IMG/VR virus record: IMGVR_UViG_3300020477_001008 | Span: 178,647-242,646 of that record | Reading direction: 5' to 3' (one strand) | DNA: 64,000 nt | Part shown: piece after piece, positions 4,445 through 53,550 of the stretch | Position numbering within the stretch: the first letter of the stretch is position 1 | Layout of the letters: every line of letters starts with the position of its first letter | The notes under the pieces: model-generated | What the model saw: only the letters and a program-made list of their open reading frames with translations | Told to the model about the DNA's origin: nothing | Database searches by the model: none | Translations under genes and position numbers: made by a program

Positions 4445-4450
4445 TCAACA

Positions 4451-4457
4451 ATAAATA
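4451..4457 (+). promoter_or_regulatory. T4-like late promoter box ATAAATA, 5 nt before sufS ATG
   Basis: One of at least 9 TAAATA-N5/N8-ATG instances in the window. Confidence 0.55.
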
Positions 4458-4462
4458 TTATT

Positions 4463-5668
4463 ATGCACAATATTCGAAAACAATTTCCCATATTTGATAA
4501 AACATTACCTAACGGTAAAAAATTAGTATATTTAGATAGTGCTAATTCTTCACAAAAACCGAAAAGGGTATTAGATAGATTATATGATTTTTATGCACAA
4601 GAATATAGTAGTGTTGGGAGAAGTATACACCAGTTAAGTACAGGTGCAAGTAAATGTTTAAATGATAGTAGAGAAGCAGTTGCAAAATTTTTAAATGCTG
4701 GTTCTGTAGATGAAATTGTTTTTACTAAAAGTGCCACAGAAGCTATTAATACGATTGCAGAAAGTTTTGGCAGAACTCAACGTGATCATTATGAAATAAT
4801 TTGTTCTGAATTAGAACATAATTCAAATTATCTTCCTTGGCATTTGCAAAGAGCTCATAAAAATGCAACAATTAAATTTATTCCTTTAAAAGATGATTAT
4901 ACATTAGATGTAGATAAGCTAGAAAGTTTAATTACTAAAAAAACTAAAATGATAGCAATAACTCATTTATCAAATGTTACTGGAGAAGTAATTAATGTTA
5001 AAAAAATATGTGAGATAGCACACAGTAAAGGAATAGCAGTTTTTGTAGATGGTACACAAGGTGCACCACATATGAAAGTTGATGTACAAGATATTGATTG
5101 TGATTTTTATTGTATTAGTGGTCATAAAATGTACGGACCTTCAGGCGTTGGGGCTTTGTACGCCAAAGAAAAATGGTTAGATGAATTATCGCCTTTTCAA
5201 GGTGGTGGTGGAACGGTACTTGATGCAACGCAAAGTGTTATTCAATATGCAGATGGACCAAAAAAATGGGAAGCTGGAACACACCCAGTTGCTGAAATTG
5301 TAGCATTAAAAGAAGCAATTGATTTTTATTATGATGTTGGATTTGATAATATGTTAAATCACGAAAAACAATTAGTTGAGTATTTGTATGAAAAATTAGC
5401 ATCTGATAATGATATTGAGTTACTATGTGGTAATAAGCCTAATGCTGTTTTATCATTTAATATTAAAGGAATACATCACGAAGATATGTCAATGTTTTTA
5501 GATGAATATGGTATTGCTACAAGACCAGGTCAACATTGTGCTATGTTATTCCATAAAAGGTACAGTTTAACTGGTTCTGTTAGAGTATCATTAGGTGTAT
5601 ATAATACCAAAGAAGAAATGGACTTTTTCTTACAGTCTTTGGGTGAAATTAAGAAGAGATTATCCTAA
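4463..5668 (+). CDS. sufS: Cysteine desulfurase, SufS type
   Basis: YLDSANSSQKP, DGTQG, SGHKMYGP (PLP Lys), EAGT, RPGQHCA (catalytic Cys). Confidence 0.93.
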   Translation: MHNIRKQFPIFDKTLPNGKKLVYLDSANSSQKPKRVLDRLYDFYAQEYSSVGRSIHQLSTGASKCLNDSREAVAKFLNAGSVDEIVFTKSATEAINTIAESFGRTQRDHYEIICSELEHNSNYLPWHLQRAHKNATIKFIPLKDDYTLDVDKLESLITKKTKMIAITHLSNVTGEVINVKKICEIAHSKGIAVFVDGTQGAPHMKVDVQDIDCDFYCISGHKMYGPSGVGALYAKEKWLDELSPFQGGGGTVLDATQSVIQYADGPKKWEAGTHPVAEIVALKEAIDFYYDVGFDNMLNHEKQLVEYLYEKLASDNDIELLCGNKPNAVLSFNIKGIHHEDMSMFLDEYGIATRPGQHCAMLFHKRYSLTGSVRVSLGVYNTKEEMDFFLQSLGEIKKRLS

Positions 5669-7859: not shown

Positions 7860-9230
7860 ATGAAAGTAGACAAATATATTAAAGTAATTGATGAGTCAAT
7901 TGAAGCACAGAAAAAATGGAGAACTGTTCCTGCACCTGTACGTGGTGAGGCAATTAGAAAGTTTGGAAATAAATTAAGAGAAAATTTAGTATCAGTTGGA
8001 AAAGGTGTTACTAGAGAAAGTAAAAAAATATTAGTAGAAGGTATAGGTGAAGTACAAGAAGTAATTGATATGTGTGATTTTGCAGTTGGGCTATCAAGAC
8101 AACTATATGGAAAAACAATGCCTTCTGAAAGACAGGATCATAGACTACAAGAAATTTGGAATCCTATTGGAGTAGTTGGTGTAATTACAGCTTTTAATTT
8201 TCCTGTTGCACCTTGGGGTTGGAATTTTTGTTTAGCAATTGTATGTGGTAATAGTGTTATTTGGAAACCATCTCCAAAAACAATGGAAGTATCTCATTTA
8301 TGTAAAAAGATTTGGGACGAAACTGTAGAAACTGATGATGAACGTAAACTTTTAGAAATTATAGATGGTGATGTAACTGAATCACGTTGGATGGCACAAG
8401 ACAAAAGGATTAATTTATTAAGTGCTACAGGTTCTTGTGAAATGGGTAAAGCATTAGCACCATTAGTATCAGAAAGAATGGGTAAAGGATTATATGAATT
8501 AGGTGGAAATAATGCAATGGTTGTGTCTAAACACGCAAATTTAGATTTGGCAGTAAGAGCTATTGTTTTTAGTGCAGTAGGAACTTGTGGACAAAGATGT
8601 ACAACATTAAGAAGATTAATAGTACACGAGTCTAAATATGATGAATTATTGGAAAGATTAACAAAATCATATGCAAGTTTACCTATAGGAAATCCAATAA
8701 AAAGAGAAAATTTAGTAGGTCCATTAATAAATCAACAAGCATTAGATAAAATGCAAGGTGTATTAAAAGAATGTAAAGAAAAAGGATATACAATACACGG
8801 CGGAGAACCATTAGCAGATCTTGGAGAAGGCTTTGTTAAACCTGCTATTGTTGAAGTACCAGAACAATGCGATATTGTAAGAACAGAAACATTTGCTCCT
8901 ATTTTGTATACTATGAAATATAATGAGCTAGATGAAGCAATAGCAATACAAAATGATGTAGATCAAGGATTAAGTTCTTGTATATTTACAGACAATATTC
9001 AAGAAGCTGAAACATTTATTTCTGCACAAGGTTCAGATTGTGGAATAGTAAATATTAACATAGGACCATCAGGTGCAGAGATTGGTGGAGCATTTGGTGG
9101 AGAAAAAGATACAGGCGGCGGAAGAGAATCAGGCTCTGATGCTTGGAAACAGTATATGAAAAGAACTACTGTTACAACAAACTATGGTAAAGACCTACCA
9201 TTAGCACAAGGAATAACATTCGATGCCTAA
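7860..9230 (+). CDS. Aldehyde dehydrogenase, ALDH7 / piperideine-6-carboxylate dehydrogenase family
   Basis: VPAPVRGE, ITAFNFPVA, WKPS, ATGS, ELGGNNA, GQRCT (catalytic Cys), ETFAP, GAEIGGAFGGEKDTGGGRESGSDAWKQY. Confidence 0.92.
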   Translation: MKVDKYIKVIDESIEAQKKWRTVPAPVRGEAIRKFGNKLRENLVSVGKGVTRESKKILVEGIGEVQEVIDMCDFAVGLSRQLYGKTMPSERQDHRLQEIWNPIGVVGVITAFNFPVAPWGWNFCLAIVCGNSVIWKPSPKTMEVSHLCKKIWDETVETDDERKLLEIIDGDVTESRWMAQDKRINLLSATGSCEMGKALAPLVSERMGKGLYELGGNNAMVVSKHANLDLAVRAIVFSAVGTCGQRCTTLRRLIVHESKYDELLERLTKSYASLPIGNPIKRENLVGPLINQQALDKMQGVLKECKEKGYTIHGGEPLADLGEGFVKPAIVEVPEQCDIVRTETFAPILYTMKYNELDEAIAIQNDVDQGLSSCIFTDNIQEAETFISAQGSDCGIVNINIGPSGAEIGGAFGGEKDTGGGRESGSDAWKQYMKRTTVTTNYGKDLPLAQGITFDA

Positions 9231-9813
9231 AGGCTTTTATAAAGATCCAGACTTAAATTTTGATATTAAGAAAATGCAATCAGCATTAAAAGAAGTTGAT
9301 TCAAGAGTAGCAAGACAATCTCCGTTAGGTGAAAGAGATATTAATGCAATTTGTTTAACACAGGTGCCAGGAGATCCAAATTCAATTACTGGCGGTAATG
9401 TTAGAGGATTGTTTTGGACTAAACCAGATAGTACATACGAAGAAGTTCAAAGAGAAGAACCAATTGATGAAACAAAGTATTCAGAATTTGTAAAACTATT
9501 CGAAGACACTTATTTTAAAGATGTGTATGATAGTATATGTAACAAATATAAAATTGGTAGAATTAGATTGTTATGGAAATTACCTCGTACAACTTTAAGT
9601 TGGCATAGAGATCCTGAACCAAGATTACATATTCCTATAGTTACAAACTATGGTGCTCGTATGTGTATTGATGATGTAGTTCATCATATGCCTGCAGATG
9701 GATCAACTTGGATTACTGATAATACAAAATATCATAATGCATTTAATGGTGGAGAAGAAGATAGAGTACATTTAGTTGCCACTGTTTTAGACTTTGATTT
9801 AGCTAAATTCTAA
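9223..9813 (+). CDS. Aspartyl/asparaginyl beta-hydroxylase-like Fe(II)/2OG cupin
   Basis: LSWHRDPEPRLHIPIVTN...HNAFNGGEEDRVHLV (HxD...H facial triad, basic Arg). Confidence 0.7.
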   Translation: MPKGFYKDPDLNFDIKKMQSALKEVDSRVARQSPLGERDINAICLTQVPGDPNSITGGNVRGLFWTKPDSTYEEVQREEPIDETKYSEFVKLFEDTYFKDVYDSICNKYKIGRIRLLWKLPRTTLSWHRDPEPRLHIPIVTNYGARMCIDDVVHHMPADGSTWITDNTKYHNAFNGGEEDRVHLVATVLDFDLAKF

Positions 9814-9863
9814 CATTTTTTATTTCATCCTCAACAATAACTTACACAACCTACAATATATGC

Positions 9864-9892
9864 TTGACAAAATACAACTTATACACTATATT
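9864..9892 (+). promoter_or_regulatory. Sigma70-type promoter for porin
   Basis: TTGACA-N17-TATATT. Confidence 0.7.
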
Positions 9893-9899
9893 GTATCTT

Positions 9900-9949
9900 G
9901 AGTATGAAAAAAATACATACTCTATTTTTAATGTTCCAATGAAGGAACA
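9900..9949 (+). promoter_or_regulatory. Two-hairpin 5' UTR of the porin gene
   Basis: GAGTATG/CATACTC (9900-9922) and TGTTCC/GGAACA (9932-9949), followed by GGAGG at 9955. Confidence 0.5.
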
Positions 9950-9961
9950 ATTAAGGAGGAA

Positions 9962-10891
9962 ATGATGAGAAAAATAATAAGCACAGCCTTGGTTGTATTA
10001 TTTGCAGGTTTTCTTTTTTCATTAACAGCTTGTAGTGAAGCTGAAGCAGTAGAAACAAATATCTACGGTTCAATAAACTATAAAGTTAGTAATGATGAAG
10101 ACACAAACGGCAAACACAATTTAAAGGCCGAAAATAACTCATCTTATGTTGGTATAGATGCCAGCGAAGGTATAGGCGAAGGCATAACAGGTTTCGCTAA
10201 ATTAGAAGTTGGCGTTGATACTGACGACAGTAATAACAATCCTTTTGATTCAAAGTTAGCCTATGTAGGTTTAAACTTTGGTGAGATTGGATCTGTATCT
10301 GCTGGGCGACAGTCATCTCCGTTCACTGATAATGTTAGTGGAAACACAGATGTATTTGAAGTTTATGGTTCAGGTGCTGATCAAAGTTTGTTCGTAAGAG
10401 ATACAAACACGATTGCGTACTCGAACGTATTAGGCCCACTTACATTTGATGGCTTGGCCAAAATAGATGGATCTACTGGTAAAAGTGGTGTAGATGTTGG
10501 AGAAGCAACAGTTACATACAATGGCAGTACGTTCACAGTATCAGGCGGTATGTCTAATGATAATGTCAATGACATTGATTATTATGGTGTTGGACTTACA
10601 GCAGATGCTTCATCTATAGGGCTTCCAATAACTGTGGGTTATACTCACACGTTAAAAGATGCCGCAACTGATGTAACAGGCAATGAAATCATTGGATCTT
10701 ATTCTACAGGTAATACAACAATTACAGGTGGATACGGTAAAATCGAAGATTCAACAGCATTTTATACTGCCGGTGCATCATTTGGAATAACTGATTCTTT
10801 ATCTACGTATGTTGAGTATGAACATTCAGATAAAACTGGATCATCTAATGATACAGACAATTATTCCACAGGTCTTAAATTTACTTTCTAA
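9962..10891 (+). CDS. Gram-negative outer-membrane porin
   Basis: Signal peptide, IYGSINY first strand, SSYVGIDASEGIGEG, AYVGLNFG...GR, amphipathic strands, C-terminal GLKFTF with terminal Phe. Confidence 0.85.
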   Translation: MMRKIISTALVVLFAGFLFSLTACSEAEAVETNIYGSINYKVSNDEDTNGKHNLKAENNSSYVGIDASEGIGEGITGFAKLEVGVDTDDSNNNPFDSKLAYVGLNFGEIGSVSAGRQSSPFTDNVSGNTDVFEVYGSGADQSLFVRDTNTIAYSNVLGPLTFDGLAKIDGSTGKSGVDVGEATVTYNGSTFTVSGGMSNDNVNDIDYYGVGLTADASSIGLPITVGYTHTLKDAATDVTGNEIIGSYSTGNTTITGGYGKIEDSTAFYTAGASFGITDSLSTYVEYEHSDKTGSSNDTDNYSTGLKFTF

Positions 10892-10925
10892 TTTAAGGCA
10901 TTTTCAAGTTAACTTGAGATAAATT

Positions 10926-10959
10926 GGGGGAAAGTTGGACAAACTTTCCACTTTTCCCC
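10926..10959 (+). terminator. Hairpin after porin, possible intrinsic terminator
   Basis: GGAAAGTT/AACTTTCC stem, with an alternative GGGGAAAG/CTTTTCCCC pairing; T-rich tract follows. Confidence 0.4.
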
Positions 10960-10991
10960 TCTTGACTTTTTTAAATTAATGTTTATATTAG

Positions 10992-10999
10992 TATAAATA
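10992..10999 (+). promoter_or_regulatory. T4 late promoter consensus TATAAATA upstream of hsp20
   Basis: Exact TATAAATA match. Confidence 0.65.
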
Positions 11000-11003
11000 A
11001 CTT

Positions 11004-11059
11004 TGTAGATTGCTTTAGATAGGATCTACATTACATAAACTTGCTTAAAAGGAGGAGTT
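11004..11059 (+). promoter_or_regulatory. Tandem ROSE-like RNA thermometer hairpins in hsp20 5' UTR
   Basis: Two hairpins each place UUGCU opposite purine-rich AGGA/GGAG with a bulged G; the second sequesters the SD. Confidence 0.55.
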
Positions 11060-11062
11060 AAA

Positions 11063-11506
11063 ATGACAAAAAATCTATCTATTTTTAATCAATTAAGACC
11101 AATAACAATAGGGTTCGATAATATATTTGACCATTTTGAGAATATGTTTGACGGAAACGTTATGACTATTCCACAAGTAAATTATCCACCATACAATATT
11201 GTAAGAACAGGAGACAACACTTATGATATTGAGTTAGCATTAGCAGGATTCAGCAAAGAAGATATTAATGTTGAATATGAAAATAATGTACTAACAGTAA
11301 AATCAATTAAAAAGGCAGAAGAAACAGAAGAACAAGCTGATGGAGTTATCCATAGAGGTATTTCTAAAAGAATGTTTTCTAAATCTTTTACAGTTGCCGA
11401 TGAAGTTGAGGTTAAAGGTGCAGAACTTAAAGATGGTTTGCTTAAAGTTTCTTTGGAAAGAATTATTCCAGAAGCTAAAAAGCCAAGAACTATCAAAATA
11501 AAATAA
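11063..11506 (+). CDS. hsp20: Small heat-shock protein Hsp20 (IbpA-like)
   Basis: IGFDNIFDHF, NYPPYNIVR, IELALAGFSKEDI, HRGISKRMF, AELKDGLLKVSLERIIPE. Confidence 0.95.
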   Translation: MTKNLSIFNQLRPITIGFDNIFDHFENMFDGNVMTIPQVNYPPYNIVRTGDNTYDIELALAGFSKEDINVEYENNVLTVKSIKKAEETEEQADGVIHRGISKRMFSKSFTVADEVEVKGAELKDGLLKVSLERIIPEAKKPRTIKIK

Positions 11507-11521
11507 AGACTTGATTAAGGG

Positions 11522-11541
11522 TAGGGTGTTTAGGCACCCTA
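11522..11541 (+). terminator. GC-rich hairpin between hsp20 and dnaK
   Basis: TAGGGTG-TTTAGG-CACCCTA; no U-tract, so it may be a stabiliser or processing site. Confidence 0.35.
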
Positions 11542-11599
11542 TCTAAAAGGTCGTAAATTAAAAAAACGTGCTTATATATAAAGGCGTAAAGGAGAAAAG

Positions 11600-13492
11600 A
11601 TGAGTAAAATAATTGGAATAGACTTAGGTACTACAAACTCTTGCGTTTCAGTAATGGAGGGTAAAGGTGCTAAAGTAATCGAAAATGCTGAAGGAAATAG
11701 AACAACACCTTCAGTTGTATCATTTGGAGATGAAAGATTAGTAGGTACACCGGCTAAAAGACAAGCGGTAACAAATCCAACTAATACAATTTTTGCAACC
11801 AAAAGATTAATTGGAAGAAAGTTTGATGGAGATTCTGTACAAAAAGATATACAGACATCACCATTTAAAATAGTAAAAGCAGATAACGGAGATGCTTGGG
11901 TAGAAAGTAATGGTGAAAAATACTCACCAAGTCAAATCTCAGCTTTCGTTTTACAAAAAATGAAAGAGACTGCTGAAAAGTATTTGGGACAAGAAGTAAC
12001 TAAAGCAGTTATTACCGTTCCTGCATACTTTAATGATTCACAAAGACAAGCAACTAAAGACGCAGGTAAAATTGCAGGACTTGATGTTGAACGTATAGTA
12101 AATGAACCAACAGCGGCGGCACTTGCTTATGGGCTTGATAAAAAGAAATCAGGTACAGTAGCAGTATACGATTTAGGTGGTGGTACATTTGATATTTCTA
12201 TATTAGAAATTGGCGATGGAGTATTTGAAGTTAAATCAACAAATGGTGATACATCATTAGGTGGTGAAGACTTTGATAATGTTTTAGTCAACTATATTGT
12301 TAGTGAATTTAAAAAAGATTCAGGTGTAGATTTAAAAAATGATAATCTTGCACTTCAACGTGTAAGAGAAGCGGCGGAAAAAGCAAAATGTGAATTATCA
12401 TCTGCAACACAAACAGATATTAGTTTACCATTTATTACCGCTGATAAATCTGGACCAAAACATTTAAATCTTAAACTTACAAGAGCTAAATTTGAAGCAC
12501 TTGTTGATAGTTTAATTGATAAAACACTAGAACCTTGTAAGACTGCCTTAAAAGATGCAGAACTTTCAGCAGGAGATATTAATGAAGTAATACTTGTTGG
12601 TGGTATGACAAGAATGCCAAAAGTTGAACAAGCAGTTAAAAACTTCTTTGGAAAAGATCCACATAAAGGAGTTAATCCAGATGAGGTAGTGGCAATTGGT
12701 GCCGCGATACAAGCCGGTGTGCTTCAAGGAGATGTAAAAGATGTATTGTTGTTAGACGTTACACCTTTATCACTTGGTATTGAAACATTAGGTAGTGTAT
12801 GTACAAAACTGATTGAAAAGAATACAACTATTCCTACAAGAAAAAGCCAAGTATTCTCTACAGCAGAAGATAGCCAACCTGCTGTTTCAATAAGAGTACT
12901 ACAAGGTGAAAGAGAAATGGCCGCTGATAATAAGTTATTAGGTAACTTTGAATTAGTTGGTATTGCACCTGCTCCAAGAGGAGTTCCACAAATCGAAGTA
13001 ACATTTGATATTGATGCAAATGGTATTGTAAATGTATCTGCTAAAGATAAAGGTACAGGCAAAGAACAAAAAATACAAATACAAGCATCAGGTGGATTGT
13101 CAGATGATGAAATTGACAAAATGGTTAAAGACGCAGAAGCAAATAAAGATGCTGATAAAAAGAAAAGAGAAGAAGTAGATACTAAAAACCAAGGAGATAC
13201 TTTAGTTCACTCTGTTGAAAAACAGTTAAAAGAACACGGAGACAAGTTATCTGCTGAAGATAAAAGTAAACTTGAAGAAGATGTTAATGCATTAAAAGAA
13301 GCATTAAAGTCTGACAATAGTGATGCTATTAAAGATAAAGTAAAATCTTTAACAGAGTCAGCAATGAAACTTGGTGAAGCAGTATACAAATCACAACAAT
13401 CAGAACAACCACAGCAAGAACAAAAAACAAAAGACGATAATGTAGTTGATGCTGATTTCGAAGAAGTCAATAAAAAAGACAGCAAACAGTAA
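11600..13492 (+). CDS. dnaK: Molecular chaperone DnaK (Hsp70)
   Basis: [76 protein letters not shown]. Confidence 0.99.
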
Positions 13493-13496
13493 AGTT

Positions 13497-13520
13497 ATTT
13501 CCCCCTTAATTGGGGGAAAT
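13497..13520 (+). terminator. Hairpin after dnaK
   Basis: ATTTCCCCC-TTAATT-GGGGGAAAT perfect 9-bp stem. Confidence 0.6.
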
Positions 13521-14097: not shown

Positions 14098-14700
14098 ATG
14101 AATAGATCCATTTTTTCAAAATACAATATATTTCTAGAGTGGTGGTGGTTTTTCTGCTCACTTATCTTAATTTTCTTTGTACTAGGAACAGTTAACTTAT
14201 ACGAAATAGTATGGAATGCTGACCAAACTAAAATATCTTATATTATTTTAGCATTGTTTGGTGCAGTATCAGTATTTTGTGGACGCGAAGCTTGGAAACT
14301 CTCTAAACTTAAAAGAGATAACTTAGATGCTGAAGTGTCTCTTAAAACAAAATATGAGACTGGTTGGTTTGCAAGTGAGATATGTTTAACATTAGGTTTG
14401 ATTGGAACGGTAAGTGGATTTATCTTAATGTTATATGGAGCATTCTCTGATTTGAACATTTCAGATCCTCATAGTGTTCAAGAAAGTTTAGGTAAAATGA
14501 GTGTAGGGATGAGTACAGCTCTATACACGACATTAGTTGGTTTGATATGTAGTGTATTATTGAAATTACAATTTTTTAGATTAGAAATGCATTTAGACAC
14601 TTACATAAAACATAGAGCAGTTGTATACAAAGCTAGGCTTATGGAAGAAGCACAAAAACTTACGGACCAAACTAATGAATCGAGATCGTTACAAGACTAG
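14098..14700 (+). CDS. MotA/TolQ/ExbB proton-channel family protein
   Basis: Four TM segments; LGLIGTVSGFI and GMSTALYTTLVGL motifs; preceded by CTAAATA box. Confidence 0.8.
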   Translation: MNRSIFSKYNIFLEWWWFFCSLILIFFVLGTVNLYEIVWNADQTKISYIILALFGAVSVFCGREAWKLSKLKRDNLDAEVSLKTKYETGWFASEICLTLGLIGTVSGFILMLYGAFSDLNISDPHSVQESLGKMSVGMSTALYTTLVGLICSVLLKLQFFRLEMHLDTYIKHRAVVYKARLMEEAQKLTDQTNESRSLQD

Positions 14701-21272: not shown

Positions 21273-22745
21273 ATGACTGATAAACCTAAACTACCATCGA
21301 AAACGTTTTGTGCTTTACCTTGGATGCACTTGTCAACAAGGCCTGACGGAAATATGCGAGTATGTTGTACAGCAAACGCAAGTTCTGTTGGTGCTACAAA
21401 TGATAAGGAATTTGGAGGACAAGTGGGACTATTACGTAATGAAGATGGTGTACCGGCAAATTTAAACAATGCAGATTTAATGTCTAGTTGGAATAACAGT
21501 TATATGAAAAATGTGCGTAAGCAGATGTTAACTGGAAAAAGACCACCAAGTTGTATTAAATGTTATAAAGAAGAAGATGCAGGACATATGAGTAAGCGTC
21601 AATGGGAAACTGAATATTGGTTAAACAGATATTCAATGGATGAAATAATTGGCGAAACAACTGAAGATGGTGCTATTCCACCTAAGATTAGATATATTGA
21701 TTTACGTATGGGATCTAAATGTAATTTAAAATGTATTATGTGTAGTCCACACGATAGTTCATTGTGGGTAAAAGACTGGCAGGCTGTTTATCCTAAAATT
21801 AAAAATCCTATATTAAAAGAATCAATGAGCTGGCAGAATAAAGGAAAAGTTCACGGAGCAAATTACAATTGGCATAAAGACAATCCTACATTCTGGGATC
21901 AATTATATGAGCAAATACCTCATATGTATCAGTTATATTTTGCTGGAGGCGAATCTACTATTATTGAAGAGCATTATACTTTATTAGAAGAAGTAATTAG
22001 ACGTGGATATGCTCACAAGATAGAATTACGATACAACTCAAATGGTGTCGAAATGCCTGATAGATTATTTGAGATTTGGAGCAAATTTAAGAGAGTAAGA
22101 TTTCATTATAGTGTTGACTCTATAGAAGAGATGAATAGTTATATACGTTTTCCAGCAGACTGGGATAATACAGTTAAGCAGTTTCATCTATTAGATAATA
22201 CAGATGATAAAGTTGAAGTTACAATTGCCTGTGCAGTACAGGCCTTGAATATACATTATATTCCTGACTTTATAAAATGGAAGCTTGAACAGAATTTTAA
22301 AAAGATTAATGTATGGCCATTTGGTGCTGGAATGATTAATTATCATTTTGTATATTGGCCACCTCAATTAAATGTAAAAGTATTACCACAATGGTTTAAA
22401 GAAAGAGTTAAACAGAAGTACGAGGAGTTTTATCCTTGGCTAGAAGAAAATTGGAAATTAAGTGGTGCTCCAAGTAAAGAAGCATTTTTAAACGCAGACT
22501 ACGGTATCAAAAGATTAAAAGGAATGGTTAAATTTATGATGTCAGAAGATTGGTCTGTGAGAATGCCAGAGTTTAGAGAGTACATAACACAATTTGATAT
22601 ACAGAGAAACACAGACTTTAAAAAAGTATTTCCTGATATGGCAGGCCTTTTAGATGAAACACTTGACAATAGTATTGAGACCAAACTAGGTGATAAAGTG
22701 GATGAAAAAACTGAAAAGGAACTTGCAGATGGCGGAACGATCTAA
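21273..22745 (+). CDS. Radical SAM protein, class A (N-terminal twitch-like module)
   Basis: CALPW...CC...CIKC, then DLRMGSKCNLKCIMC, AGGES, SVDS; ATAAATA 9 nt upstream. Confidence 0.92.
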   Translation: MTDKPKLPSKTFCALPWMHLSTRPDGNMRVCCTANASSVGATNDKEFGGQVGLLRNEDGVPANLNNADLMSSWNNSYMKNVRKQMLTGKRPPSCIKCYKEEDAGHMSKRQWETEYWLNRYSMDEIIGETTEDGAIPPKIRYIDLRMGSKCNLKCIMCSPHDSSLWVKDWQAVYPKIKNPILKESMSWQNKGKVHGANYNWHKDNPTFWDQLYEQIPHMYQLYFAGGESTIIEEHYTLLEEVIRRGYAHKIELRYNSNGVEMPDRLFEIWSKFKRVRFHYSVDSIEEMNSYIRFPADWDNTVKQFHLLDNTDDKVEVTIACAVQALNIHYIPDFIKWKLEQNFKKINVWPFGAGMINYHFVYWPPQLNVKVLPQWFKERVKQKYEEFYPWLEENWKLSGAPSKEAFLNADYGIKRLKGMVKFMMSEDWSVRMPEFREYITQFDIQRNTDFKKVFPDMAGLLDETLDNSIETKLGDKVDEKTEKELADGGTI

Positions 22746-24003
22746 AACATACTGTCCTTTACCTTTTATTCATTCACACGCAGGGTTAAATGGAAAATAT
22801 AAACCTTGTTGTAATTCAGATACATCAGTTCACGGTTACAAATATCATATAGAAAAATTAGGTTATAAAGATTGGTTTTATCATCCAGAAATGGATAAAC
22901 TAAGAAATGATTTATTAAATGGTGTACAAAATCCAATGTGTGATGTTTGTTGGAAACAAGAAGCATTTAGTTCAGATAGTTATAGAACAGTTTATATAAA
23001 AAAATATCAAGATGATAATATAAATCATAAAGATCCAAAAATAACTTATATTGATATGAAGCTATCAAATGAATGTAATTTAGCTTGTACTCATTGTGAT
23101 TATTCTAACTCATCACAAATTTATAAAGATATGTTATCTATAGAAGAGCAAGGTTTGGAGTTACCACCTCAATGGGAAAGAAGTCCTAATTTTGAAAAAA
23201 GATTAGAAGATAAAGATAGAAAAGATATGTATCATAAGCAACCACAAAACGTTGTTGATGAATTAATTGATTTAATGCCAGACCTTAAACACTTAAAAGT
23301 TACAGGTGGAGAGCCTACTATTACAAAAGAATTTTTTAGATTAGTAGATTATGCAGTTGAAAATAACTATGCAAAAAATCTTAATTTGTATATTACTACT
23401 AATGGAACAAGGTTTACTCCTGACTTTATAAAAAAATTACAACACTTTAAAAATTTACATTTAACAGTTAGTTGTGATGGATATGGAGATACTTACGAAT
23501 ATATTAGATATCCATTTACTTGGAAAATGTTTGAGAAAAGATTAAAAGTTGTTGCAGAACATTTAAAGTCAACTAATCATAATATTAGATCATTAAATTT
23601 TAACTGTGTAGCTCAGATGCAAAACATTGAAAACATACCAAAACTTGAAAATTGGATTTATGATTTATTTCAGCAACAAGCATCTCTTTATGTACAGCCA
23701 CATATTAATCCTGTTGATAGTACAAATCATTCTAAACTATTACCAAAGCATATTTTAGAAAAAGCACTAGAAGATATAAGAATATCAAATGCAAAATCAG
23801 GATATGATTTAAAAATGTATACAGATATGTTAGAATGGTTAATTAAAAACTTTAATAGTGATGAATTAAAAATATATAGATCAGTCAAATATCTAAAAAA
23901 TATGAAAAATGCACTTGTTAATCTTGACAAGATAAGAAAACAAGACTATAGAACTAATCTTGAACCATTAACAAGAGAATGGGTGGAGGGTTTAAATGTC
24001 TAA
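22729..24003 (+). CDS. Radical SAM protein, class A
   Basis: CPLPF...PCC...CDVC; CNLACTHC; TGGEP; SCDG; start set at MAERSK. Confidence 0.9.
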   Translation: MAERSKTYCPLPFIHSHAGLNGKYKPCCNSDTSVHGYKYHIEKLGYKDWFYHPEMDKLRNDLLNGVQNPMCDVCWKQEAFSSDSYRTVYIKKYQDDNINHKDPKITYIDMKLSNECNLACTHCDYSNSSQIYKDMLSIEEQGLELPPQWERSPNFEKRLEDKDRKDMYHKQPQNVVDELIDLMPDLKHLKVTGGEPTITKEFFRLVDYAVENNYAKNLNLYITTNGTRFTPDFIKKLQHFKNLHLTVSCDGYGDTYEYIRYPFTWKMFEKRLKVVAEHLKSTNHNIRSLNFNCVAQMQNIENIPKLENWIYDLFQQQASLYVQPHINPVDSTNHSKLLPKHILEKALEDIRISNAKSGYDLKMYTDMLEWLIKNFNSDELKIYRSVKYLKNMKNALVNLDKIRKQDYRTNLEPLTREWVEGLNV

Positions 24004-25246
24004 AACATTTAAGTTTTGTAAGGCACCATTTGGTAGTATATATGTAAGACCAAATGTAAGACCAAATCCACAAGCTGGTAAACAAACTGAGATTAGCTTC
24101 TGCTGTGTGCAGACTGAAAAATATATGTTAAAAGAAAATGAAACAGTTAATGATTTTTGGAAAAGCGACTGGGCAAAAGAACATAGGCAACAGTTTCTTA
24201 ATAAAGAGTGGCCTTCTTCTTGTAGTTATTGTGAATGGAAAGAAAATAACAATATTGAAAGCGATATTGGAACACACCAACAGATTACTATTAAAGAGTA
24301 TAATATTTCTGATGGCAATGAAATGGCTAAACCAAAATATGTTGATTATAGACCAGATAATTTATGCAACCTAATGTGTACAATGTGTGGTCCTAGTAAT
24401 AGTAATTTAATTGAAGATATGTGGCGTGAAATACCTATTAGTCCTGGGTGGCACCACGAAGCAAATGCAGGAATAGATGGTGATGTAACTATTGAAGAAG
24501 AAGAATTAGTAACCAAAGAATTACTTGGTAATCATACAATGCAATTAAAAGTTTTAGGTGGAGAACCTACTATTAATAAAAAAGTTCATTCAGTATTTCA
24601 ATATGCGATTGATAAAGGATATGCACAAAATATAGATTTAAAAATAACAACCAATTTTACTAATGTAAACAAAACTTATGATATGTTTGATAAGTTTAAG
24701 TCTTGCAGGATACAAGCTAGTATTGATGCAACAGGACCAACATATGATTATATTAGAAGACCAGCTAAATGGTCAGCTGTAAAAGAAAAGCTTTTACAAT
24801 TTGCTGATAGATACGAAAATTCTTATCCAAAAATGCAATGGAATTTTAATATTGTTTGGCAATTAGCAAATTGCTTTACTGTTAAAGATTGGTTACCTGA
24901 ATTACTTGATATGTTCTACAATGATCCAAAGCTAAAAAAAATAGCAAAACAAGACGTAGGATTATCATTAATTAATTGTGATGGAACAGGTATAACACTA
25001 GACGCTATACCAGATAGTATGAAACATTATATAATTGATGATTTAGAAGATTTATTAAAAGATTGGAAACATAATCCTTTCGCATTTAAAGATATTGAAA
25101 CATTAATCAAGTATACTGAAAATGCAAAGTTTACCAATTTGCAACATAGAGCATTTAAAAGAAAATTTACATTAATGGATCAATATAAAAAAACAAATAT
25201 GTTTGAATTAAGTCCAAGGTTTAAGGAGTTGTATGACTTTAGATAA
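23996..25246 (+). CDS. Radical SAM protein, class A
   Basis: CKAPF...FCC...CSYC; DNLCNLMCTMC; LGGEP; SIDA. Confidence 0.9.
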   Translation: MSKTFKFCKAPFGSIYVRPNVRPNPQAGKQTEISFCCVQTEKYMLKENETVNDFWKSDWAKEHRQQFLNKEWPSSCSYCEWKENNNIESDIGTHQQITIKEYNISDGNEMAKPKYVDYRPDNLCNLMCTMCGPSNSNLIEDMWREIPISPGWHHEANAGIDGDVTIEEEELVTKELLGNHTMQLKVLGGEPTINKKVHSVFQYAIDKGYAQNIDLKITTNFTNVNKTYDMFDKFKSCRIQASIDATGPTYDYIRRPAKWSAVKEKLLQFADRYENSYPKMQWNFNIVWQLANCFTVKDWLPELLDMFYNDPKLKKIAKQDVGLSLINCDGTGITLDAIPDSMKHYIIDDLEDLLKDWKHNPFAFKDIETLIKYTENAKFTNLQHRAFKRKFTLMDQYKKTNMFELSPRFKELYDFR

Positions 25247-26153
25247 AAAATTGTTTTTAACAAAACACGCCGCTATCTATGATCCTGAATTTCAAGATAG
25301 ATTGTGGAATGCACCTTGGCAAGATTGGTTAAGTAAATCAGGTTATTTTAATGTTAAAGATGAATATATAGAAACTATTGATAAATGGATTTATAATTCT
25401 AATGAAATTAAATTTAATGGGTTAGACAGATTTAAGTATAAAGATTTAATTCACGGAACAACTCAAGCTTTTGATGAAGCATATTACAGATATAAAGAAC
25501 GTAGGTTACGAACTTATAGAGGAGAGTATGCTTATCATAAAAGAGTGCAAGGAGTAAAGAATTTTATTGATACTAAAGAAGGTGATTATATACCAATTGA
25601 AGAAAATGATTGGGTAGTAATAAGTTTACCATTTTGTGGTAATGGTGCTGAGCCACCATTTTTAGAAAAAGTTTTAAATGATTGTGCAAATTTAAATGTA
25701 CCAGTATTAATTGATTGTGCTTGGTTTGGAACACACTATTGGAAAAAAACATTTACTTTAGATAATCCTTGTATTAAAGAAGTATGTTTTAGTATTTCAA
25801 AAGGAATAGGAATGGGTAATATGAGAACTGGTATTCGATATTCTAATTACGATGATCATTTACCTATTAGACAACATAATAATTATAACCATTTGCCTTT
25901 AGGATTATCACAAATTGGTATATGGCAAATGCAAAAGTTTAGTTCTGATTTTATTGGTAACAAGTATAATGAAATGGTAAAAACAGTTTGCGAACAAAAT
26001 AATATTATAATGACTCCAGTTATGCATATTGGGTTACTTGAAAAAGGACATCCTGATTATGAATATTTTTTAACTGATGATGTTTATAGTAAAGTTGGAA
26101 TACGTGAAGCTGTAAAAAAGTATAGAAAGGAATTGCGAAATGAAGAAAGATAA
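25233..26153 (+). CDS. PLP-dependent (aminotransferase fold I-like) protein inside the radical SAM array
   Basis: VISLPF..G, VLIDCAWFG, FSISKG (PLP Lys), RTGIR. Confidence 0.6.
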   Translation: MTLDKKLFLTKHAAIYDPEFQDRLWNAPWQDWLSKSGYFNVKDEYIETIDKWIYNSNEIKFNGLDRFKYKDLIHGTTQAFDEAYYRYKERRLRTYRGEYAYHKRVQGVKNFIDTKEGDYIPIEENDWVVISLPFCGNGAEPPFLEKVLNDCANLNVPVLIDCAWFGTHYWKKTFTLDNPCIKEVCFSISKGIGMGNMRTGIRYSNYDDHLPIRQHNNYNHLPLGLSQIGIWQMQKFSSDFIGNKYNEMVKTVCEQNNIIMTPVMHIGLLEKGHPDYEYFLTDDVYSKVGIREAVKKYRKELRNEER

Positions 26154-27444
26154 TTTTTGCATATTACCTTTTATACATTTAAGTACTAGGACTAACGGTG
26201 CTATGCAATTATGCTGTCACGCAAATAGTAGTACTACAAAAAATTATCGACAGCCAGGACTTAATAGAAAATCAAATGGCGAGTTTGTATATGTGTATAA
26301 AGACAAACCTTCTGATTATTGGAATACTGATTATATGAAAGCTGTTCGTAAAAAACTAATAAATGGCCAAATGCCAAAAGAATGTATGGTATGCTATAAA
26401 GAAGAAGCATCAGGATATAGATCAAAAAGACAATGGGAAAATGATGAGTGGTCTGAAAAAGTAAATTTTGATGATGTATTAGCAAAAGTAAAAGATGATG
26501 GCGAAGCACCTTTTGATATACGTTATGTAGATATGAAATTAGGTAATAAATGTGACCTGGCTTGTTTAATGTGTAATCCAGCAGATAGTTCTTTATGGAT
26601 ACCTGATTATAATAAATTAATTGATTCTAATATATCTGAAAAAGCTAAAGAAGAATTGTTATGGAAAAAAGGCGAAGGAAAATTAAATTGGTATAAAGTA
26701 GATGCAGTTTTTTGGAAAGATATAGAAAGCAAATTAGACAGTATTGAAAATCTATATATAATTGGTGGAGAACCAACAATCAATCCAGAGTTTAAAACTT
26801 TCTTGGAAATGTGCGTAGAATCAGGGCATTCCAGCCGGATAAACCTGCGTTTTAATACGAACGGGTATACTACTACAAAAGAGCTTGATCGCCTTTATAC
26901 GTGCTTTAAAACGTGTTTAATCCACCTTTCTTTAGACGGGTTTGGTGATTATCATAATCTTATACGTTATCCAAGTAATTGGGAAACAATGTTGGAAAAA
27001 TTAGATTATTGGGATAATACAGCAGACAATATACAAGTTACAATTGACTTAACAGCTTCAATATTAAACATTATGCATATACCAGATTTTATTAAGTGGA
27101 AAGTATCACAGAACTTTAAAAAAATTAATACAGATATAAATCAAGGATTTATAGGAATTCATTATTTGCATTCTCCTAATTTTTTAAAAGTAACATCATT
27201 GCCAAAACATATTAAAGAACAAGTAGTAAAACAGTATGAAGATTTATACCAATGGATAAGTGAAAACATTGAAGGTGGAGATAAAAAATTAAAAAAATAT
27301 CAAAAGTTCAAAGCACTTATAGATTTAATGAATGGTAAAGATGAAAGTCATATGTGGCCAACAGTAATAGAGTATTTAGATAAGATGGATAGTATACGAG
27401 GAACAAATTGGAGAAAGGTGTTAAAAGAATATGAAGAAAACTAG
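26140..27444 (+). CDS. Radical SAM protein, class A
   Basis: CILPF...LCC...CMVC; GNKCDLACLMC; IGGEP; SLDG. Confidence 0.92.
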   Translation: MKKDNFCILPFIHLSTRTNGAMQLCCHANSSTTKNYRQPGLNRKSNGEFVYVYKDKPSDYWNTDYMKAVRKKLINGQMPKECMVCYKEEASGYRSKRQWENDEWSEKVNFDDVLAKVKDDGEAPFDIRYVDMKLGNKCDLACLMCNPADSSLWIPDYNKLIDSNISEKAKEELLWKKGEGKLNWYKVDAVFWKDIESKLDSIENLYIIGGEPTINPEFKTFLEMCVESGHSSRINLRFNTNGYTTTKELDRLYTCFKTCLIHLSLDGFGDYHNLIRYPSNWETMLEKLDYWDNTADNIQVTIDLTASILNIMHIPDFIKWKVSQNFKKINTDINQGFIGIHYLHSPNFLKVTSLPKHIKEQVVKQYEDLYQWISENIEGGDKKLKKYQKFKALIDLMNGKDESHMWPTVIEYLDKMDSIRGTNWRKVLKEYEEN

Positions 27445-32116: not shown

Positions 32117-33152
32117 GAAAATATATCCAAAATGTTTGTTTACTACAAAAGCAAAAGCAACTTATATTAGTCACGATGGCTATGTAAGACCTTGTTGCTT
32201 TGTTCATAGGCATAATAAAACTGAAAGAGATGAACCGTGGATGGTTGATTTTAAACATAATATTGGTTCTGGTAAAAGTTTAGAAGAAATGTTTAGTACT
32301 CCTGAGTATACAGATTTTTTTAATAGGTTAAAGACTGGAAAAGATATACCTGAAAGATGTTATGAAGTCTGTGGAAAAGTTCAAACAAATGTTGGAACAG
32401 ATCATAGAAAAGAAAAAACAACAAATGAAGTACCAAGATGGACTAAAGCAGTTGAGCAGTCATATGAAGAAACATATAAAGTACAAAAGAAATTACAAGT
32501 AGATGTAACTCACAGATGCAGTTTAGGTTGTCCTAAATGTATGAGGTTTGAAGCAAATTGGACAGATCCAGTAACTAAAAAGAAATATGCCCTAGCTCAT
32601 CAAGTTTTAAAAAAAGTAGAATTACAAGTAGATGATTTTAAAAAGTTATTTAAAGAAAATCCGCAGATGTGTAAAGGTGATGTTGATTTTTGTGGTACTT
32701 GGAGTGATGCAATTTATCATCCTGAATTTTTAGAAATTTGTAGAGTAATTAAAAACAATGGTGCTAATATTAATATTGCAACAAATGGATCTCGTAAAAA
32801 ACCAGAATGGTGGGATGAATTATATAGTATGATGGATCCTGCTTGGGATTCAATTGTATTTGGAATGGACGGTTTAAAAGATACAGCAGACAAATATAGA
32901 AAATATATTATATACGATGATGTTATTACAGCAATGAAAAAAGGTGCTGATGCTGGATTTGTTAAAAATAAATGGTCCTTTATTGTTTTTAATTTTAATC
33001 AACATCAAGTTTATGAAGCAGAACAATTAGCAAAAGATATTGGAATAAAATTTGAAATAGTAAAATCACATAGATGGGATGGACCAAATGATCCATACAT
33101 ACCTACTAAAGAATGGTTACCACAATCAACAATCAAGGAGTACAATTTATAA
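32100..33152 (+). CDS. Radical SAM protein, class B core with the Cys module moved to the N-terminus
   Basis: PKC...RPCC...CYEVC precedes CSLGCPKC, ATNGS, FGMDGLKDTADKYR; start may be GTG 32109. Confidence 0.88.
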   Translation: MTKVNKKIYPKCLFTTKAKATYISHDGYVRPCCFVHRHNKTERDEPWMVDFKHNIGSGKSLEEMFSTPEYTDFFNRLKTGKDIPERCYEVCGKVQTNVGTDHRKEKTTNEVPRWTKAVEQSYEETYKVQKKLQVDVTHRCSLGCPKCMRFEANWTDPVTKKKYALAHQVLKKVELQVDDFKKLFKENPQMCKGDVDFCGTWSDAIYHPEFLEICRVIKNNGANINIATNGSRKKPEWWDELYSMMDPAWDSIVFGMDGLKDTADKYRKYIIYDDVITAMKKGADAGFVKNKWSFIVFNFNQHQVYEAEQLAKDIGIKFEIVKSHRWDGPNDPYIPTKEWLPQSTIKEYNL

Positions 33153-53542: not shown

Positions 53543-53550
53543 ATATTGTT

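What the first reader, a model, noticed from the sequence alone, without database searches (positions are those of the whole stretch)
10992..11065. Tandem ROSE-like thermometer hairpins under a late promoter upstream of hsp20
Seen: hairpin 1 UGUAGA-UUGCU-UUAGAU-AGGA-UCUACA (11004-11030) and hairpin 2 AAC-UUGCUU-AAAA-GGAG-GAGUU (11038-11059). Both have UUGCU with a bulged G facing AGGA/GGAG, and the second covers the SD. Known: ROSE elements of alphaproteobacterial small heat-shock genes use U(U/C)GCU paired to the SD. Inference: temperature-gated translation of the viral sHSP, with the motif present twice.
Basis: partly seen in the sequence, partly recalled or inferred. Interest (0 to 1): 0.6.

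Follow-up and report, generated by a model that had tools for sequence, protein, structure and literature searches.

The report
Phage hsp20 leader: ROSE-like RNA thermometer
A giant marine phage carries a small heat-shock gene behind a conserved two-hairpin RNA leader, shared with SAR11 bacteria and many marine T4-like phages, that hides the ribosome-binding site and most likely lets the protein be made only when the RNA melts.

Summary
Both hairpins lie exactly where stated (11004-11030 and 11038-11059) and are the minimum-energy fold. The whole leader aligns end to end with Rfam ROSE_3, the short two-hairpin ibpA thermometer of Pseudomonas, but below threshold (25 bits; the gathering score is 43).

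The decisive evidence is comparative. The same leader precedes hsp20 in 80 viral contigs, in cultured pelagiphages, an OM43 phage and cyanophages, and in SAR11 genomes.
- In 55 distinct sequences, 97% of predicted pairs hold.
- 14 of 17 pairs show compensatory changes.
- Both bulged G residues are invariant.

Hairpin 1 is always the more stable of the two. Hairpin 2 hides the Shine-Dalgarno sequence and is marginal (about -2 kcal/mol at 37 C).

It is one bipartite element, not two tandem thermometers.

SAR11 copies sit behind a sigma-32-type promoter. The phage copy sits behind TATAAATA, which overlaps a sigma-70-like promoter. TATAAATA-type motifs mark gene starts across this genome, and the genome encodes a T4 gp55-type late sigma factor.

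Temperature gating itself is inferred from homology and predicted energies; it has not been shown. Autoregulation by the Hsp20 protein remains a live alternative or addition.

I call it a new member of a known kind, in a phage setting I did not find described.

The parts
10926..10959 (+). Strong hairpin followed by a U-rich tail: probable intrinsic terminator of the upstream porin gene, which would isolate the hsp20 transcription unit
   Evidence: -18.2 kcal/mol, z -2.57. The pattern scan did not flag it because the T run starts more than 2 nt after the stem. RNA contigs of run X8 do not cover 10747-10988.
10962..10989 (+). Sigma-70-like promoter TTGACT-N16-TATATT (probable early or host-type promoter)
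   Evidence: 10 of 12 matches, the best in 10700-11700. Similar CTTGAC / TTGTAA-N16-TATAT(A/T) boxes lie upstream of hairpin 1 in related loci.
10992..10999 (+). T4-type late promoter motif TATAAATA. With T4 geometry the transcript would start at about 11005, the foot of hairpin 1
   Evidence: only 2 copies in the window against 16 expected; 28 NATAAATA on the + strand of the genome, 20 of them intergenic and just upstream of starts; gp55-type late sigma factor (phrog_12791, E 5.5e-86). NATAAATA is conserved 1-5 nt before hairpin 1 in many relatives.
11004..11030 (+). Hairpin 1: an 8-bp outer stem closed by U11011-G11023, bulged G11012, C11013-G11022, U11014-A11021, and a 6-nt loop. It is the stable 5' hairpin
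   Evidence: -7.3 kcal/mol at 37 C; 99% of cells paired, 7 of 9 pairs with compensatory changes; bulged G, the following C and its G partner are invariant in 55 of 55.
11031..11037 (+). Single-stranded A/U-rich linker of variable length in relatives
   Evidence: A 97%-identical relative has AA inserted at 11032 and no other change in the leader.
11038..11059 (+). Hairpin 2, the predicted sensor. Anti-SD CUUGCUU (11040-11046) with bulged G11043 pairs with G11052-G11057 of the SD stretch; G11051 sits in the loop
   Evidence: -2.0 kcal/mol at 37 C, -6.1 at 15 C; 95% paired, 7 of 8 pairs with double changes; bulged G in 55 of 55; removing the bulge in silico gives -5.8.
11063..11506 (+). hsp20 / ibpA-type small heat-shock protein gene (147 aa). 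The equivalents of E. coli IbpA Y34 and R93 are conserved
   Evidence: PF00011, E 3.4e-19; phrog_432; alignment with E. coli IbpA and IbpB.
11600..13492 (+). dnaK (Hsp70) downstream, behind its own sigma-70-like promoter and without a thermometer leader in this phage
   Evidence: The 15.6-bit model hit at 11529-11591 overlaps the promoter -10 box and was rejected. In relative L007, dnaK does have a full copy of the leader.

Best explanation
The 58-59 nt hsp20 leader is a short, two-hairpin ROSE-like translational control element. It is homologous to the ibpA leader of SAR11 bacteria and to leaders of hsp20 in many marine T4-like phages. Transcription starts at or a few bases before hairpin 1, from TATAAATA (phage late sigma factor) and/or the overlapping sigma-70-like promoter. 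Hairpin 1 is a stable 5' stem-loop that does not melt; it probably protects the mRNA and helps hairpin 2 to fold. Hairpin 2 pairs the anti-SD CUUGCUU with the Shine-Dalgarno sequence. A conserved bulged G keeps that helix only marginally stable, so at the usual sea temperature the ribosome site is mostly closed. It opens gradually as temperature rises, or when the helix is otherwise destabilised, and translation of the phage sHSP then rises. Shown here: sequence, fold, conservation, covariation, homology, promoter motifs and the presence of the mRNA in metatranscriptomes. Inferred: the transcription start, the repression, and the temperature response.
For: Structure: both hairpins are the minimum-energy fold. 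Homology to a tested class: the leader aligns over all 69 positions of Rfam ROSE_3, with both bulged G residues in register (25 bits, E 0.0035 on 351 nt); a relative scores 30.3 bits. The Pseudomonas members of that class are experimentally shown thermometers with 61-62 nt leaders, a non-melting hairpin I and a melting hairpin II (PMC3669281). Conservation: all 48 distinct viral leaders parse into the same two bulged-G hairpins. Covariation: model R2 finds the leader in front of hsp20 in the viral loci, in 13 SAR11 loci and in six of seven cultured-phage loci, namely Mosig, HTVC008M, HTVC115P, Melnitz, P-SSM4 and, weakly, S-RIM12. Across these, 97.3% of cells are paired against 76.7% in shuffles (0 of 500) and 46-64% with slid partners, and 14 of 17 pairs carry double changes. 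Both bulged G residues are invariant. Energetics: hairpin 1 is more stable than hairpin 2 in 61 of 61 leaders. Hairpin 2 has a median of -2.0 kcal/mol at 37 C and -5.2 at 15 C, and would be -5.6 at 37 C without the bulge. In the window, predicted SD unpairing rises from 0.00-0.04 at 5 C to 0.16-0.23 at 35 C. Specificity: one copy in this genome and one copy in each of 35 of 81 Pelagibacterales genomes. Expression: metatranscriptome contigs identical or nearly identical to the window begin at 11012, 11033 and 11048. None of those three runs covers 10868-10988.
Against: No experiment exists. Nearest-neighbour energies predict only gradual opening, with half-opening near 50-55 C, far above sea temperature; ROSE helices contain non-canonical pairs that these parameters do not model. 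The folding-energy z-score of the leader is unremarkable. The Rfam score is below the curated threshold. The covariation alignment was fitted to the structure by the model, which inflates pair counts somewhat; the anchor-based parse and single-sequence folds (55 of 61 and 46 of 61 reproduce the two motifs) are independent of it. Contig ends do not prove a transcription start, and a contig from run X16, from a 97%-identical relative, spans porin to hsp20. A pelagic phage sees little temperature change, so the physiological signal may be something else.
Confidence: 0.75

Rival explanations
1. Autoregulatory operator (aggregation sensor). The leader is mainly a binding site for the Hsp20 protein itself. 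Free Hsp20 binds its own 5' UTR and blocks translation, and when it is titrated by unfolded or aggregating proteins (for example during mass production of virion proteins) translation is released. Temperature would be secondary. This could coexist with the thermometer, as it does in E. coli.
For: E. coli and other gamma-proteobacterial IbpA proteins repress their own translation through the ibpA 5' UTR, which is itself a ROSE-type thermometer. This needs R93 (irreplaceable) and an aromatic residue at Y34, and the authors note both residues are conserved in alpha-proteobacterial IbpAs (PMC10474464). The window protein, SAR11 IbpA, HTVC008M and P-SSM4 Hsp20 all keep the aligned Arg and Tyr, whereas IbpB lacks the Arg. 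The identical Y-[G]-C-Y / R-G-G motif is invariant in hairpin 1, which hides no ribosome site; base pairing alone does not explain such sequence conservation. A pelagic phage rarely meets heat shock.
Against: No binding was tested. The RNA determinants of IbpA binding are not defined in the papers read. K98 of E. coli IbpA is Ser in the window protein. The marginal, bulge-limited stability of hairpin 2 in all 61 leaders is what a thermosensor needs and is not required for a protein operator.
Confidence: 0.3
2. Constitutive mRNA-stability and translation-damping element. The 5' hairpin only protects the transcript from 5'-end-dependent decay, and the weak SD hairpin only lowers translation to a fixed level, with no sensing.
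For: Hairpin 1 sits at the predicted 5' end and is stable. A 5'-terminal stem-loop stabilising ibpA mRNA was proposed for Pseudomonas (PMC3669281). Predicted SD opening within 5-30 C is small.
Against: A fixed damper would not need an invariant bulged G and U(U/C)GCU in 55 of 55 leaders from phages with very different hosts. The homologous Pseudomonas elements do sense temperature. The leader is attached specifically to heat-shock genes: hsp20 everywhere, and dnaK in L007.
Confidence: 0.1
3. Chance hairpins in A+T-rich intergenic DNA, or a transcription terminator or attenuator.
For: The energy z-scores are weak, and A+T-rich sequence folds into many small hairpins.
Against: Covariation, invariant motifs and single-copy specificity argue against chance. 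No U tract follows either hairpin, and the terminator scan found none.
Confidence: 0.02

Closest known systems
Short ROSE-like RNA thermometers of Pseudomonas ibpA (Rfam ROSE_3, RF02523; Krajewski et al. 2013, PMC3669281)
   Same: Both have two hairpins in a leader of about 60 nt upstream of ibpA/hsp20. Hairpin I is stable and carries a U-G closing pair, a bulged G and a C-G pair. Hairpin II pairs U(U/C)GCU imperfectly with the SD across a bulged G. The window aligns to all 69 model positions.
   Different: The window element is A+T-rich (31% G+C) and lacks the G-C clamps that flank the SD/anti-SD core in Pseudomonas. It scores 25 bits against a threshold of 43. It is driven by phage late and sigma-70-like promoters instead of sigma-32. 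It is carried by a virus. Its temperature response is untested.
ibpA leader of Pelagibacterales (SAR11); found here, no description found in the literature searched
   Same: Same two hairpins, same invariant bulged G residues and same anti-SD. The protein is 66-72% identical. It occurs as one copy per genome in 35 of 81 genomes sampled.
   Different: The bacterial copies lie behind a sigma-32-type promoter (CTTGAAA, about 14 nt, CCCATAT). The phage copies have NATAAATA and/or TTGACT-type promoters.
Classical ROSE elements of Rhizobiales (ROSE1 of Bradyrhizobium; Rfam RF00435)
   Same: They use U(U/C)GCU against the SD with a bulged G in the last hairpin, upstream of sHSP genes. Rhizobiales loci L094 and L095 show GCAAC[G]CCC...GGG|TTGC and UUGCUU...AAGGAA.
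   Different: They have three to four hairpins and leaders of about 100 nt. There is no RF00435 match to the window at E up to 10.
Phage lambda cIII RNA thermometer (from my own knowledge, not checked here)
   Same: It is a phage-encoded mRNA whose translation depends on a temperature-sensitive structure.
   Different: It is a switch between two alternative structures that favours translation at physiological temperature. It is unrelated in sequence and gene, and it is not an SD-zipper of the ROSE type.
Single-hairpin hsp17 thermometer of Synechocystis (cited in PMC3669281)
   Same: It is an SD-masking hairpin in front of a small heat-shock gene, in the host group of the cyanophages that also carry the present leader.
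   Different: It has one hairpin and no ROSE motif. The cyanophage hsp20 leaders (P-SSM4 29.6 bits, S-RIM12 17.3 bits) follow the proteobacterial ROSE-like design, not the cyanobacterial one.

Membership tests
ROSE-like RNA thermometers (as defined in PMC3669281) | Lies in the 5' UTR of a small heat-shock protein gene | tested here: met
   hsp20 (PF00011, E 3.4e-19) starts at 11063, 3 nt after hairpin 2.
ROSE-like RNA thermometers (as defined in PMC3669281) | The 3'-proximal hairpin holds the SD, imperfectly paired with U(U/C)GCU | tested here: met
   UUGCU at 11041-11045 pairs with G11052-A11056 in the minimum-energy fold. The feature is conserved, with U/C alternation at the position facing G (columns 74/92: UG 36, CG 10, UA 9).
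ROSE-like RNA thermometers (as defined in PMC3669281) | Bulged G opposite the SD | tested here: met
   G11043 is unpaired in all folds and is G in 55 of 55 distinct relatives. Its non-canonical geometry cannot be tested here.
ROSE-like RNA thermometers (as defined in PMC3669281) | 5' hairpin(s) stable, SD hairpin labile | tested here: met
   -7.3 against -2.0 kcal/mol at 37 C in the window. Hairpin 1 is more stable in 61 of 61 leaders. These are predicted energies only.
ROSE-like RNA thermometers (as defined in PMC3669281) | Translation and SD accessibility rise with temperature | not testable with these tools
   Only predicted: SD unpaired probability goes from 0.00-0.04 at 5 C to 0.16-0.23 at 35 C.
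ROSE-like RNA thermometers (as defined in PMC3669281) | Sigma-32 promoter upstream (a usual context, not a feature of the RNA) | tested here: not met
   The window has TTGACT-N16-TATATT and TATAAATA. The SAR11 homologues do have CTTGAAA, about 14 nt, then CCCATAT.
Rfam ROSE_3 (RF02523) | Score at or above the curated gathering threshold (43 bits) | tested here: not met
   The window scores 25.0 bits, the best relative L034 30.3 bits and SAR11 locus L084 21.3 bits. There was no hit at genome scale.
Rfam ROSE_3 (RF02523) | Full-length alignment with both helices and both bulges in register | tested here: met
   Model positions 1-69 align to 11004-11068.
Rfam ROSE (RF00435) and ROSE_2 (RF01832) | Any match | tested here: not met
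   Neither is listed at E up to 10 on 10850-11200.
T4-type late promoter | TATAAATA box, used genome-wide just upstream of genes | tested here: met
   There are 28 NATAAATA on the + strand, 20 of them in the 7% of the genome that is non-coding, and most are 5-70 nt before a start. Only 2 copies occur in the window against 16 expected.
T4-type late promoter | Phage late sigma factor (gp55) and co-factors (gp33, gp45) | tested here: inconclusive
   A gp55 homologue is present (G000:C1:83009-83878; T4 gp55 E 2.4e-7, phrog_12791 E 5.5e-86). T4 gp45 gave no hit, but the record is only 55% complete. gp33 was not searched.
T4-type late promoter | Transcript 5' end about 6 nt after the box | not testable with these tools
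   RNA contigs begin at 11012, 11033 and 11048, and those three runs (X8, X17, X18) do not cover 10868-10988. This is compatible, but contig ends are not starts.
IbpA self-repression through its own 5' UTR (PMC10474464) | Arg equivalent to E. coli R93 and an aromatic residue equivalent to Y34 | tested here: met
   Both are conserved in the window protein, SAR11 IbpA, HTVC008M and P-SSM4; IbpB lacks the Arg.
IbpA self-repression through its own 5' UTR (PMC10474464) | Protein binds the leader and represses translation | not testable with these tools

The most novel reading that the evidence does not exclude
The leader is a dual sensor that marine T4-like phages have kept for a very long time. 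The two copies of the invariant bulged-G motif (one per hairpin) would be contact points for the phage's own IbpA-type Hsp20. Translation of this near-universal but functionally unexplained phage gene would then be set by the load of unfolded virion or host protein as well as by temperature. Because the same proteobacterial-style element also precedes hsp20 in cyanophages, the gene and its RNA switch would have travelled together across phages of unrelated hosts, as a self-contained regulatory cassette that needs no host factor.
Probability: 0.3. Interest if true: 0.75.

Novelty: new member of a known kind. Interest (0 to 1): 0.55.

Why it matters
hsp20 is one of the most widespread auxiliary genes of marine T4-like phages, yet how it is controlled and why it is kept are unclear. 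The results here show three things. The gene comes with a conserved, covarying ROSE-like leader in pelagiphages, an OM43 phage and cyanophages. SAR11, among the most abundant bacteria in the sea, uses the same leader behind a heat-shock promoter. The phages replaced only the promoter. This gives a concrete, testable mechanism: post-transcriptional gating by temperature and/or protein damage. It also provides a covariance model that finds these elements where the Rfam models do not reach threshold. Cultured systems in which it can be tested already exist (HTVC008M or Mosig on HTCC1062; P-SSM4 on Prochlorococcus). It would also add a virus-borne branch to a thermometer family so far described in cellular alpha- and gamma-proteobacteria. 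This matters for how ocean warming might change phage-host outcomes.

Tried and rejected
1. MAFFT alignments of the leaders (A1, A2, A3) misaligned the 3' arms because loop and linker lengths vary. RNAalifold on A1 predicted no pairs. This was an alignment failure, not evidence against structure. I replaced it with an anchor-based parse and a bootstrapped covariance model.

2. Rfam at gathering thresholds found only tRNAs in the window. A genome-scale ROSE_3 search found nothing. SAR11 and Rhizobiales loci were not recognised either, apart from L084 at 21 bits.

3. The folding-energy z-scores are not significant, so energy alone cannot support the finding.

4. A second copy in front of the window's dnaK was considered. 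The 15.6-bit hit at 11529-11591 contains ACGU[G]CUU...AAG|GCGU, but it overlaps the -10 box of a conserved TCGTAA-N16-TATATA promoter and does not fold. I rejected it. The dnaK leader in L007 is a real copy.

5. The CAU (11034-11036): AUG (11063-11065) extension of hairpin 2 appears in folds at or below 25 C. It is not part of the covarying model and I did not pursue it.

6. The direction of transfer between phage and SAR11 cannot be settled. The Hsp20 tree puts SAR11 sequences inside a mixed clade with the pelagiphages and the window, with cyanophages and Melnitz outside. The tree is midpoint-rooted, has only 149 columns and contains long branches, so no donor can be named.

7. T4 gp45 gave no hit in the 55%-complete record.

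8. Literature searches for a thermometer on SAR11 ibpA or on pelagiphage or cyanophage hsp20 found nothing relevant. The library lacks most subscription journals, so prior description cannot be excluded.

Full report
WHAT IS THERE. The window is the last 64 kb of a 242,646-bp IMG/VR virus record that CheckV estimates to be 55% complete. All large ORFs are on the + strand. A porin-like gene occupies 9962-10891 (PF00267) and an Hsp20/alpha-crystallin gene occupies 11063-11506 (PF00011, E 3.4e-19; phrog_432). dnaK follows at 11600-13492.

In the unconstrained minimum-energy fold both hairpins form, each with one unpaired G. In hairpin 1 that is G11012, lying between the U11011-G11023 pair and the C11013-G11022 pair. 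In hairpin 2 it is G11043, lying between U11042-G11055 and C11044-G11054. The second hairpin pairs CUUGCUU with G11052-G11057 of the Shine-Dalgarno stretch.

IS IT MORE THAN CHANCE? Folding energy alone says little (z -0.6 and -1.55). Three other tests are clear.
- Among 304 predicted genes of the genome, only hsp20 has both hairpin types, and only hsp20 combines U(U/C)GCU with an SD-covering bulged-G hairpin.
- A covariance model built from relatives hits the genome once at 67.1 bits (E 3e-13); the next hit scores 15.6 bits.
- The comparative evidence described in the next two paragraphs.

RELATIVES. A scan of viral contigs with the Hsp20 protein returned 80 loci. All 48 distinct upstream sequences parse into the same two hairpins. 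Hairpin 1 has an outer stem of wholly variable sequence, closed by a Y-G pair, then an invariant bulged G, an invariant C-G pair, a covarying Y-R pair and a loop of 3-7 nt. Hairpin 2 has CU(U/C)[G]CU(U), or in one clade ACU[G]UCU, facing AAG|GAG or GGA|GGUU of the SD, and lies 0-8 nt from the ATG.

The closest cellular homologues (66-72% identity) are all from Pelagibacterales, and their ibpA has the same leader. Cultured phages have it too: Methylophilales phage Melnitz (43.3 bits), Pelagibacter phages HTVC008M (42.9), Mosig (41.0) and HTVC115P (32.5), Prochlorococcus phage P-SSM4 (29.6) and, weakly, cyanophage S-RIM12 (17.3). Sinorhizobium phage Phosso gave no hit. In 81 sampled Pelagibacterales genomes, 35 have exactly one copy.

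COVARIATION. MAFFT could not align the variable loops, and RNAalifold then saw nothing. I therefore built a model from three near-identical leaders with a hand-written structure. I used it to collect and align 38 hits, rebuilt the model (R2), and aligned 61 hits, of which 55 are distinct. On that alignment:
- 97.3% of cells form standard pairs, against 76.7% in column shuffles (0 of 500 reach the observed value) and 46-64% when partners are slid by 1-3 columns;
- 14 of 17 pairs show changes on both sides;
- helix 1 is 99.0% paired, with 7 of 9 pairs compensatory;
- helix 2 is 95.3% paired, with 7 of 8 pairs compensatory.

Both bulged G residues, the C after the first one and its G partner are invariant. 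The alignment is fitted to the model, which favours the structure. Two checks are independent of it. One is the anchor-based parse. The other is the set of single-sequence folds, which reproduce the hairpin 1 motif in 55 of 61 leaders and the hairpin 2 motif in 46 of 61.

RELATION TO ROSE. On 351 nt, the only thermoregulator hit is Rfam ROSE_3, which aligns over all 69 model positions at 11004-11068 with 25.0 bits (gathering score 43, E 0.0035). The ROSE_3 consensus itself has the U-G pair, bulged G and C-G pair in hairpin I, and CUc[G]Cu...gAG in hairpin II. ROSE_3 represents the short ibpA thermometers of Pseudomonas. Those are experimentally shown to have a 61-62 nt leader and a hairpin I that does not melt. 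Their hairpin II melts, pairs U(U/C)GCU with the SD and suffices for control, and they sit behind a sigma-32 promoter (PMC3669281). No relative reaches the Rfam threshold (best 30.3 bits), and classical ROSE and ROSE_2 do not match. The element is therefore a divergent, A+T-rich branch of the short ROSE-like class. It is one bipartite element, not two thermometers in tandem.

ENERGETICS (predicted only). In the window, hairpin 1 is -7.3 kcal/mol at 37 C and -12.6 at 15 C. Hairpin 2 is -2.0 at 37 C and -6.1 at 15 C. Across 61 leaders, hairpin 1 is always the more stable. Hairpin 2 stays in a narrow marginal band (median -2.0, range 0 to -4.0 at 37 C) and would be -5.6 without the bulge. The predicted unpaired probability of the SD bases rises smoothly, from 0.00-0.04 at 5 C to 0.16-0.23 at 35 C and about 0.5 near 50-55 C. 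The pattern fits a zipper-type thermometer. The absolute midpoint is far above sea temperature and cannot be trusted for a helix with non-canonical pairs.

PROMOTERS. TATAAATA occurs twice in the window against 16 expected. In the whole record, NATAAATA occurs 28 times on the + strand. Twenty of these lie in the 7% of the genome that is non-coding, nearly all just upstream of a start codon. The record encodes a T4 gp55-type late sigma factor at G000:C1:83009-83878. The late-promoter reading is therefore well founded. With T4 geometry the start would be about 11005, the first bases of hairpin 1.

NATAAATA lies 1-5 nt before hairpin 1 in many relatives. The SAR11 copies instead have a sigma-32-type promoter: CTTGAAA, about 14 nt, then CCCATAT. 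The phage and bacterial versions thus share the RNA and differ in the promoter.

The window also has a good sigma-70-like promoter at 10962-10989 (10 of 12 matches), whose start would fall inside the late box. Related loci have the same two promoters, sometimes fused as TATATAAATA. Transcription may therefore run both early and late, which would leave translation as the regulated step; this is inference. A strong hairpin with a U-rich tail at 10926-10959 probably terminates the porin transcript.

EXPRESSION. Twenty public runs from 11 studies hold the stretch or part of it, six of them metatranscriptomes. Laid on 9900-13500, RNA-library contigs identical or nearly identical to the window begin at 11033 (X8, 377 nt, no differences), 11012 (X18, 430 nt, one substitution and two gaps) and 11048 (X17). 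None of these three runs covers 10868-10988; X8 has nothing from 10747. A contig in X16, from a 97% relative, spans porin to hsp20. Within the leader, that relative differs only by an AA insertion in the linker at 11032. This is compatible with an mRNA that starts near hairpin 1, but contigs cannot prove a start, and DNA carry-over cannot be excluded.

ALTERNATIVE OR ADDITIONAL MECHANISM. E. coli IbpA and other gamma-proteobacterial IbpAs bind their own thermometer-containing 5' UTR and repress translation. This requires R93 and an aromatic residue at position 34 (PMC10474464). The window protein, SAR11 IbpA, HTVC008M and P-SSM4 Hsp20 all keep both residues, whereas IbpB does not keep the Arg. 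Hairpin 1 hides no ribosome site, yet its bulged-G motif is invariant in sequence. That fits a recognition element better than a mere stem. I give autoregulation about 0.3, not exclusive of the thermometer.

EVOLUTION. In an Hsp20 tree, the window groups with giant-phage contigs L001, L002 and L003 (support 100/95). L001 lies in a complete 328,149-bp genome with terminal repeats. SAR11 sequences fall inside a well-supported mixed clade with the pelagiphages and the window. Other viral clades, the cyanophages and Melnitz lie outside. Gene and leader clearly share one origin, but the direction of transfer cannot be read from this short, midpoint-rooted tree. A SAR11-type host for this phage is an inference from these similarities and the 32% G+C content.

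VERDICT. It is corrected on architecture (one two-hairpin element, with an overlapping sigma-70-like promoter). It remains unproven on temperature response. I found no description of this element in SAR11, pelagiphages or cyanophages in the searchable literature, but that library is incomplete.

Noticed in passing
window 4450-4465 and 53538-53553; G000:C1 109317, 132968, 137298, 138920, 153004, 170994, 178348: In nine genes the ATG lies exactly 5 nt after NATAAATA, and in five more it lies 6-9 nt after. With T4 late-promoter geometry the transcript would begin at the A of the ATG, so many late genes of this phage may be translated from leaderless mRNAs. hsp20, with 63 nt between box and ATG, is a conspicuous exception.
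   Followed up: partly
L007:543-600 (upstream of dnaK, 602-2491): In a related phage contig the gene order is dnaK then hsp20. dnaK has its own full copy of the two-hairpin leader (56.6 bits) behind AATAAATA, so the cassette also serves a second chaperone gene. In the window, dnaK lacks it.
   Followed up: yes
window 11552-11577 and upstream of hairpin 1 in loci L007, L009, L014, L016, L024, L032, L040 and others: A conserved sigma-70-like promoter with an extended -35 region, (G)TTGTAATTT / TCGTAA / TCGCAA, then N16, then TATAT(A), recurs in front of hsp20 and dnaK. In several loci its -10 box is fused to the late box as TATATAAATA.
   Followed up: partly
window 11506-11600: Metatranscriptome contigs from two runs (X8, X18) come from a relative in which the 93-nt hsp20-dnaK spacer is replaced by 28 other letters that carry their own GGAG. 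In that relative dnaK would have no separate promoter (tables 5 and 5c).
   Followed up: no
window 21273-36973: A run of twelve consecutive + strand ORFs of 306-575 aa. The three tested (21273, 28821, 30389) match radical SAM PHROGs. This is a large paralogous radical-SAM cluster in a phage.
   Followed up: no
window 7860-10891 and 14098-14700: Cell-type genes sit beside the chaperones: an aldehyde dehydrogenase (PF00171), an Asp/Asn beta-hydroxylase-like protein (PF05118), a Gram-negative porin with a lipoprotein-like N-terminus (PF00267) and a MotA/ExbB-family channel (PF01618). There are also seven tRNA genes in the window.
   Followed up: no
L012, L015, L021, L022, L026, L035-L051, L058-L066 (one clade of viral contigs): In this clade the anti-SD is ACU[G]UCU rather than CUUGCU. 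The bulge sits two bases further along the SD (GGA|GGUU), so the register of the SD helix has shifted while the bulged G was kept. These short contigs may be phage or cellular; I did not check their gene content.
   Followed up: partly
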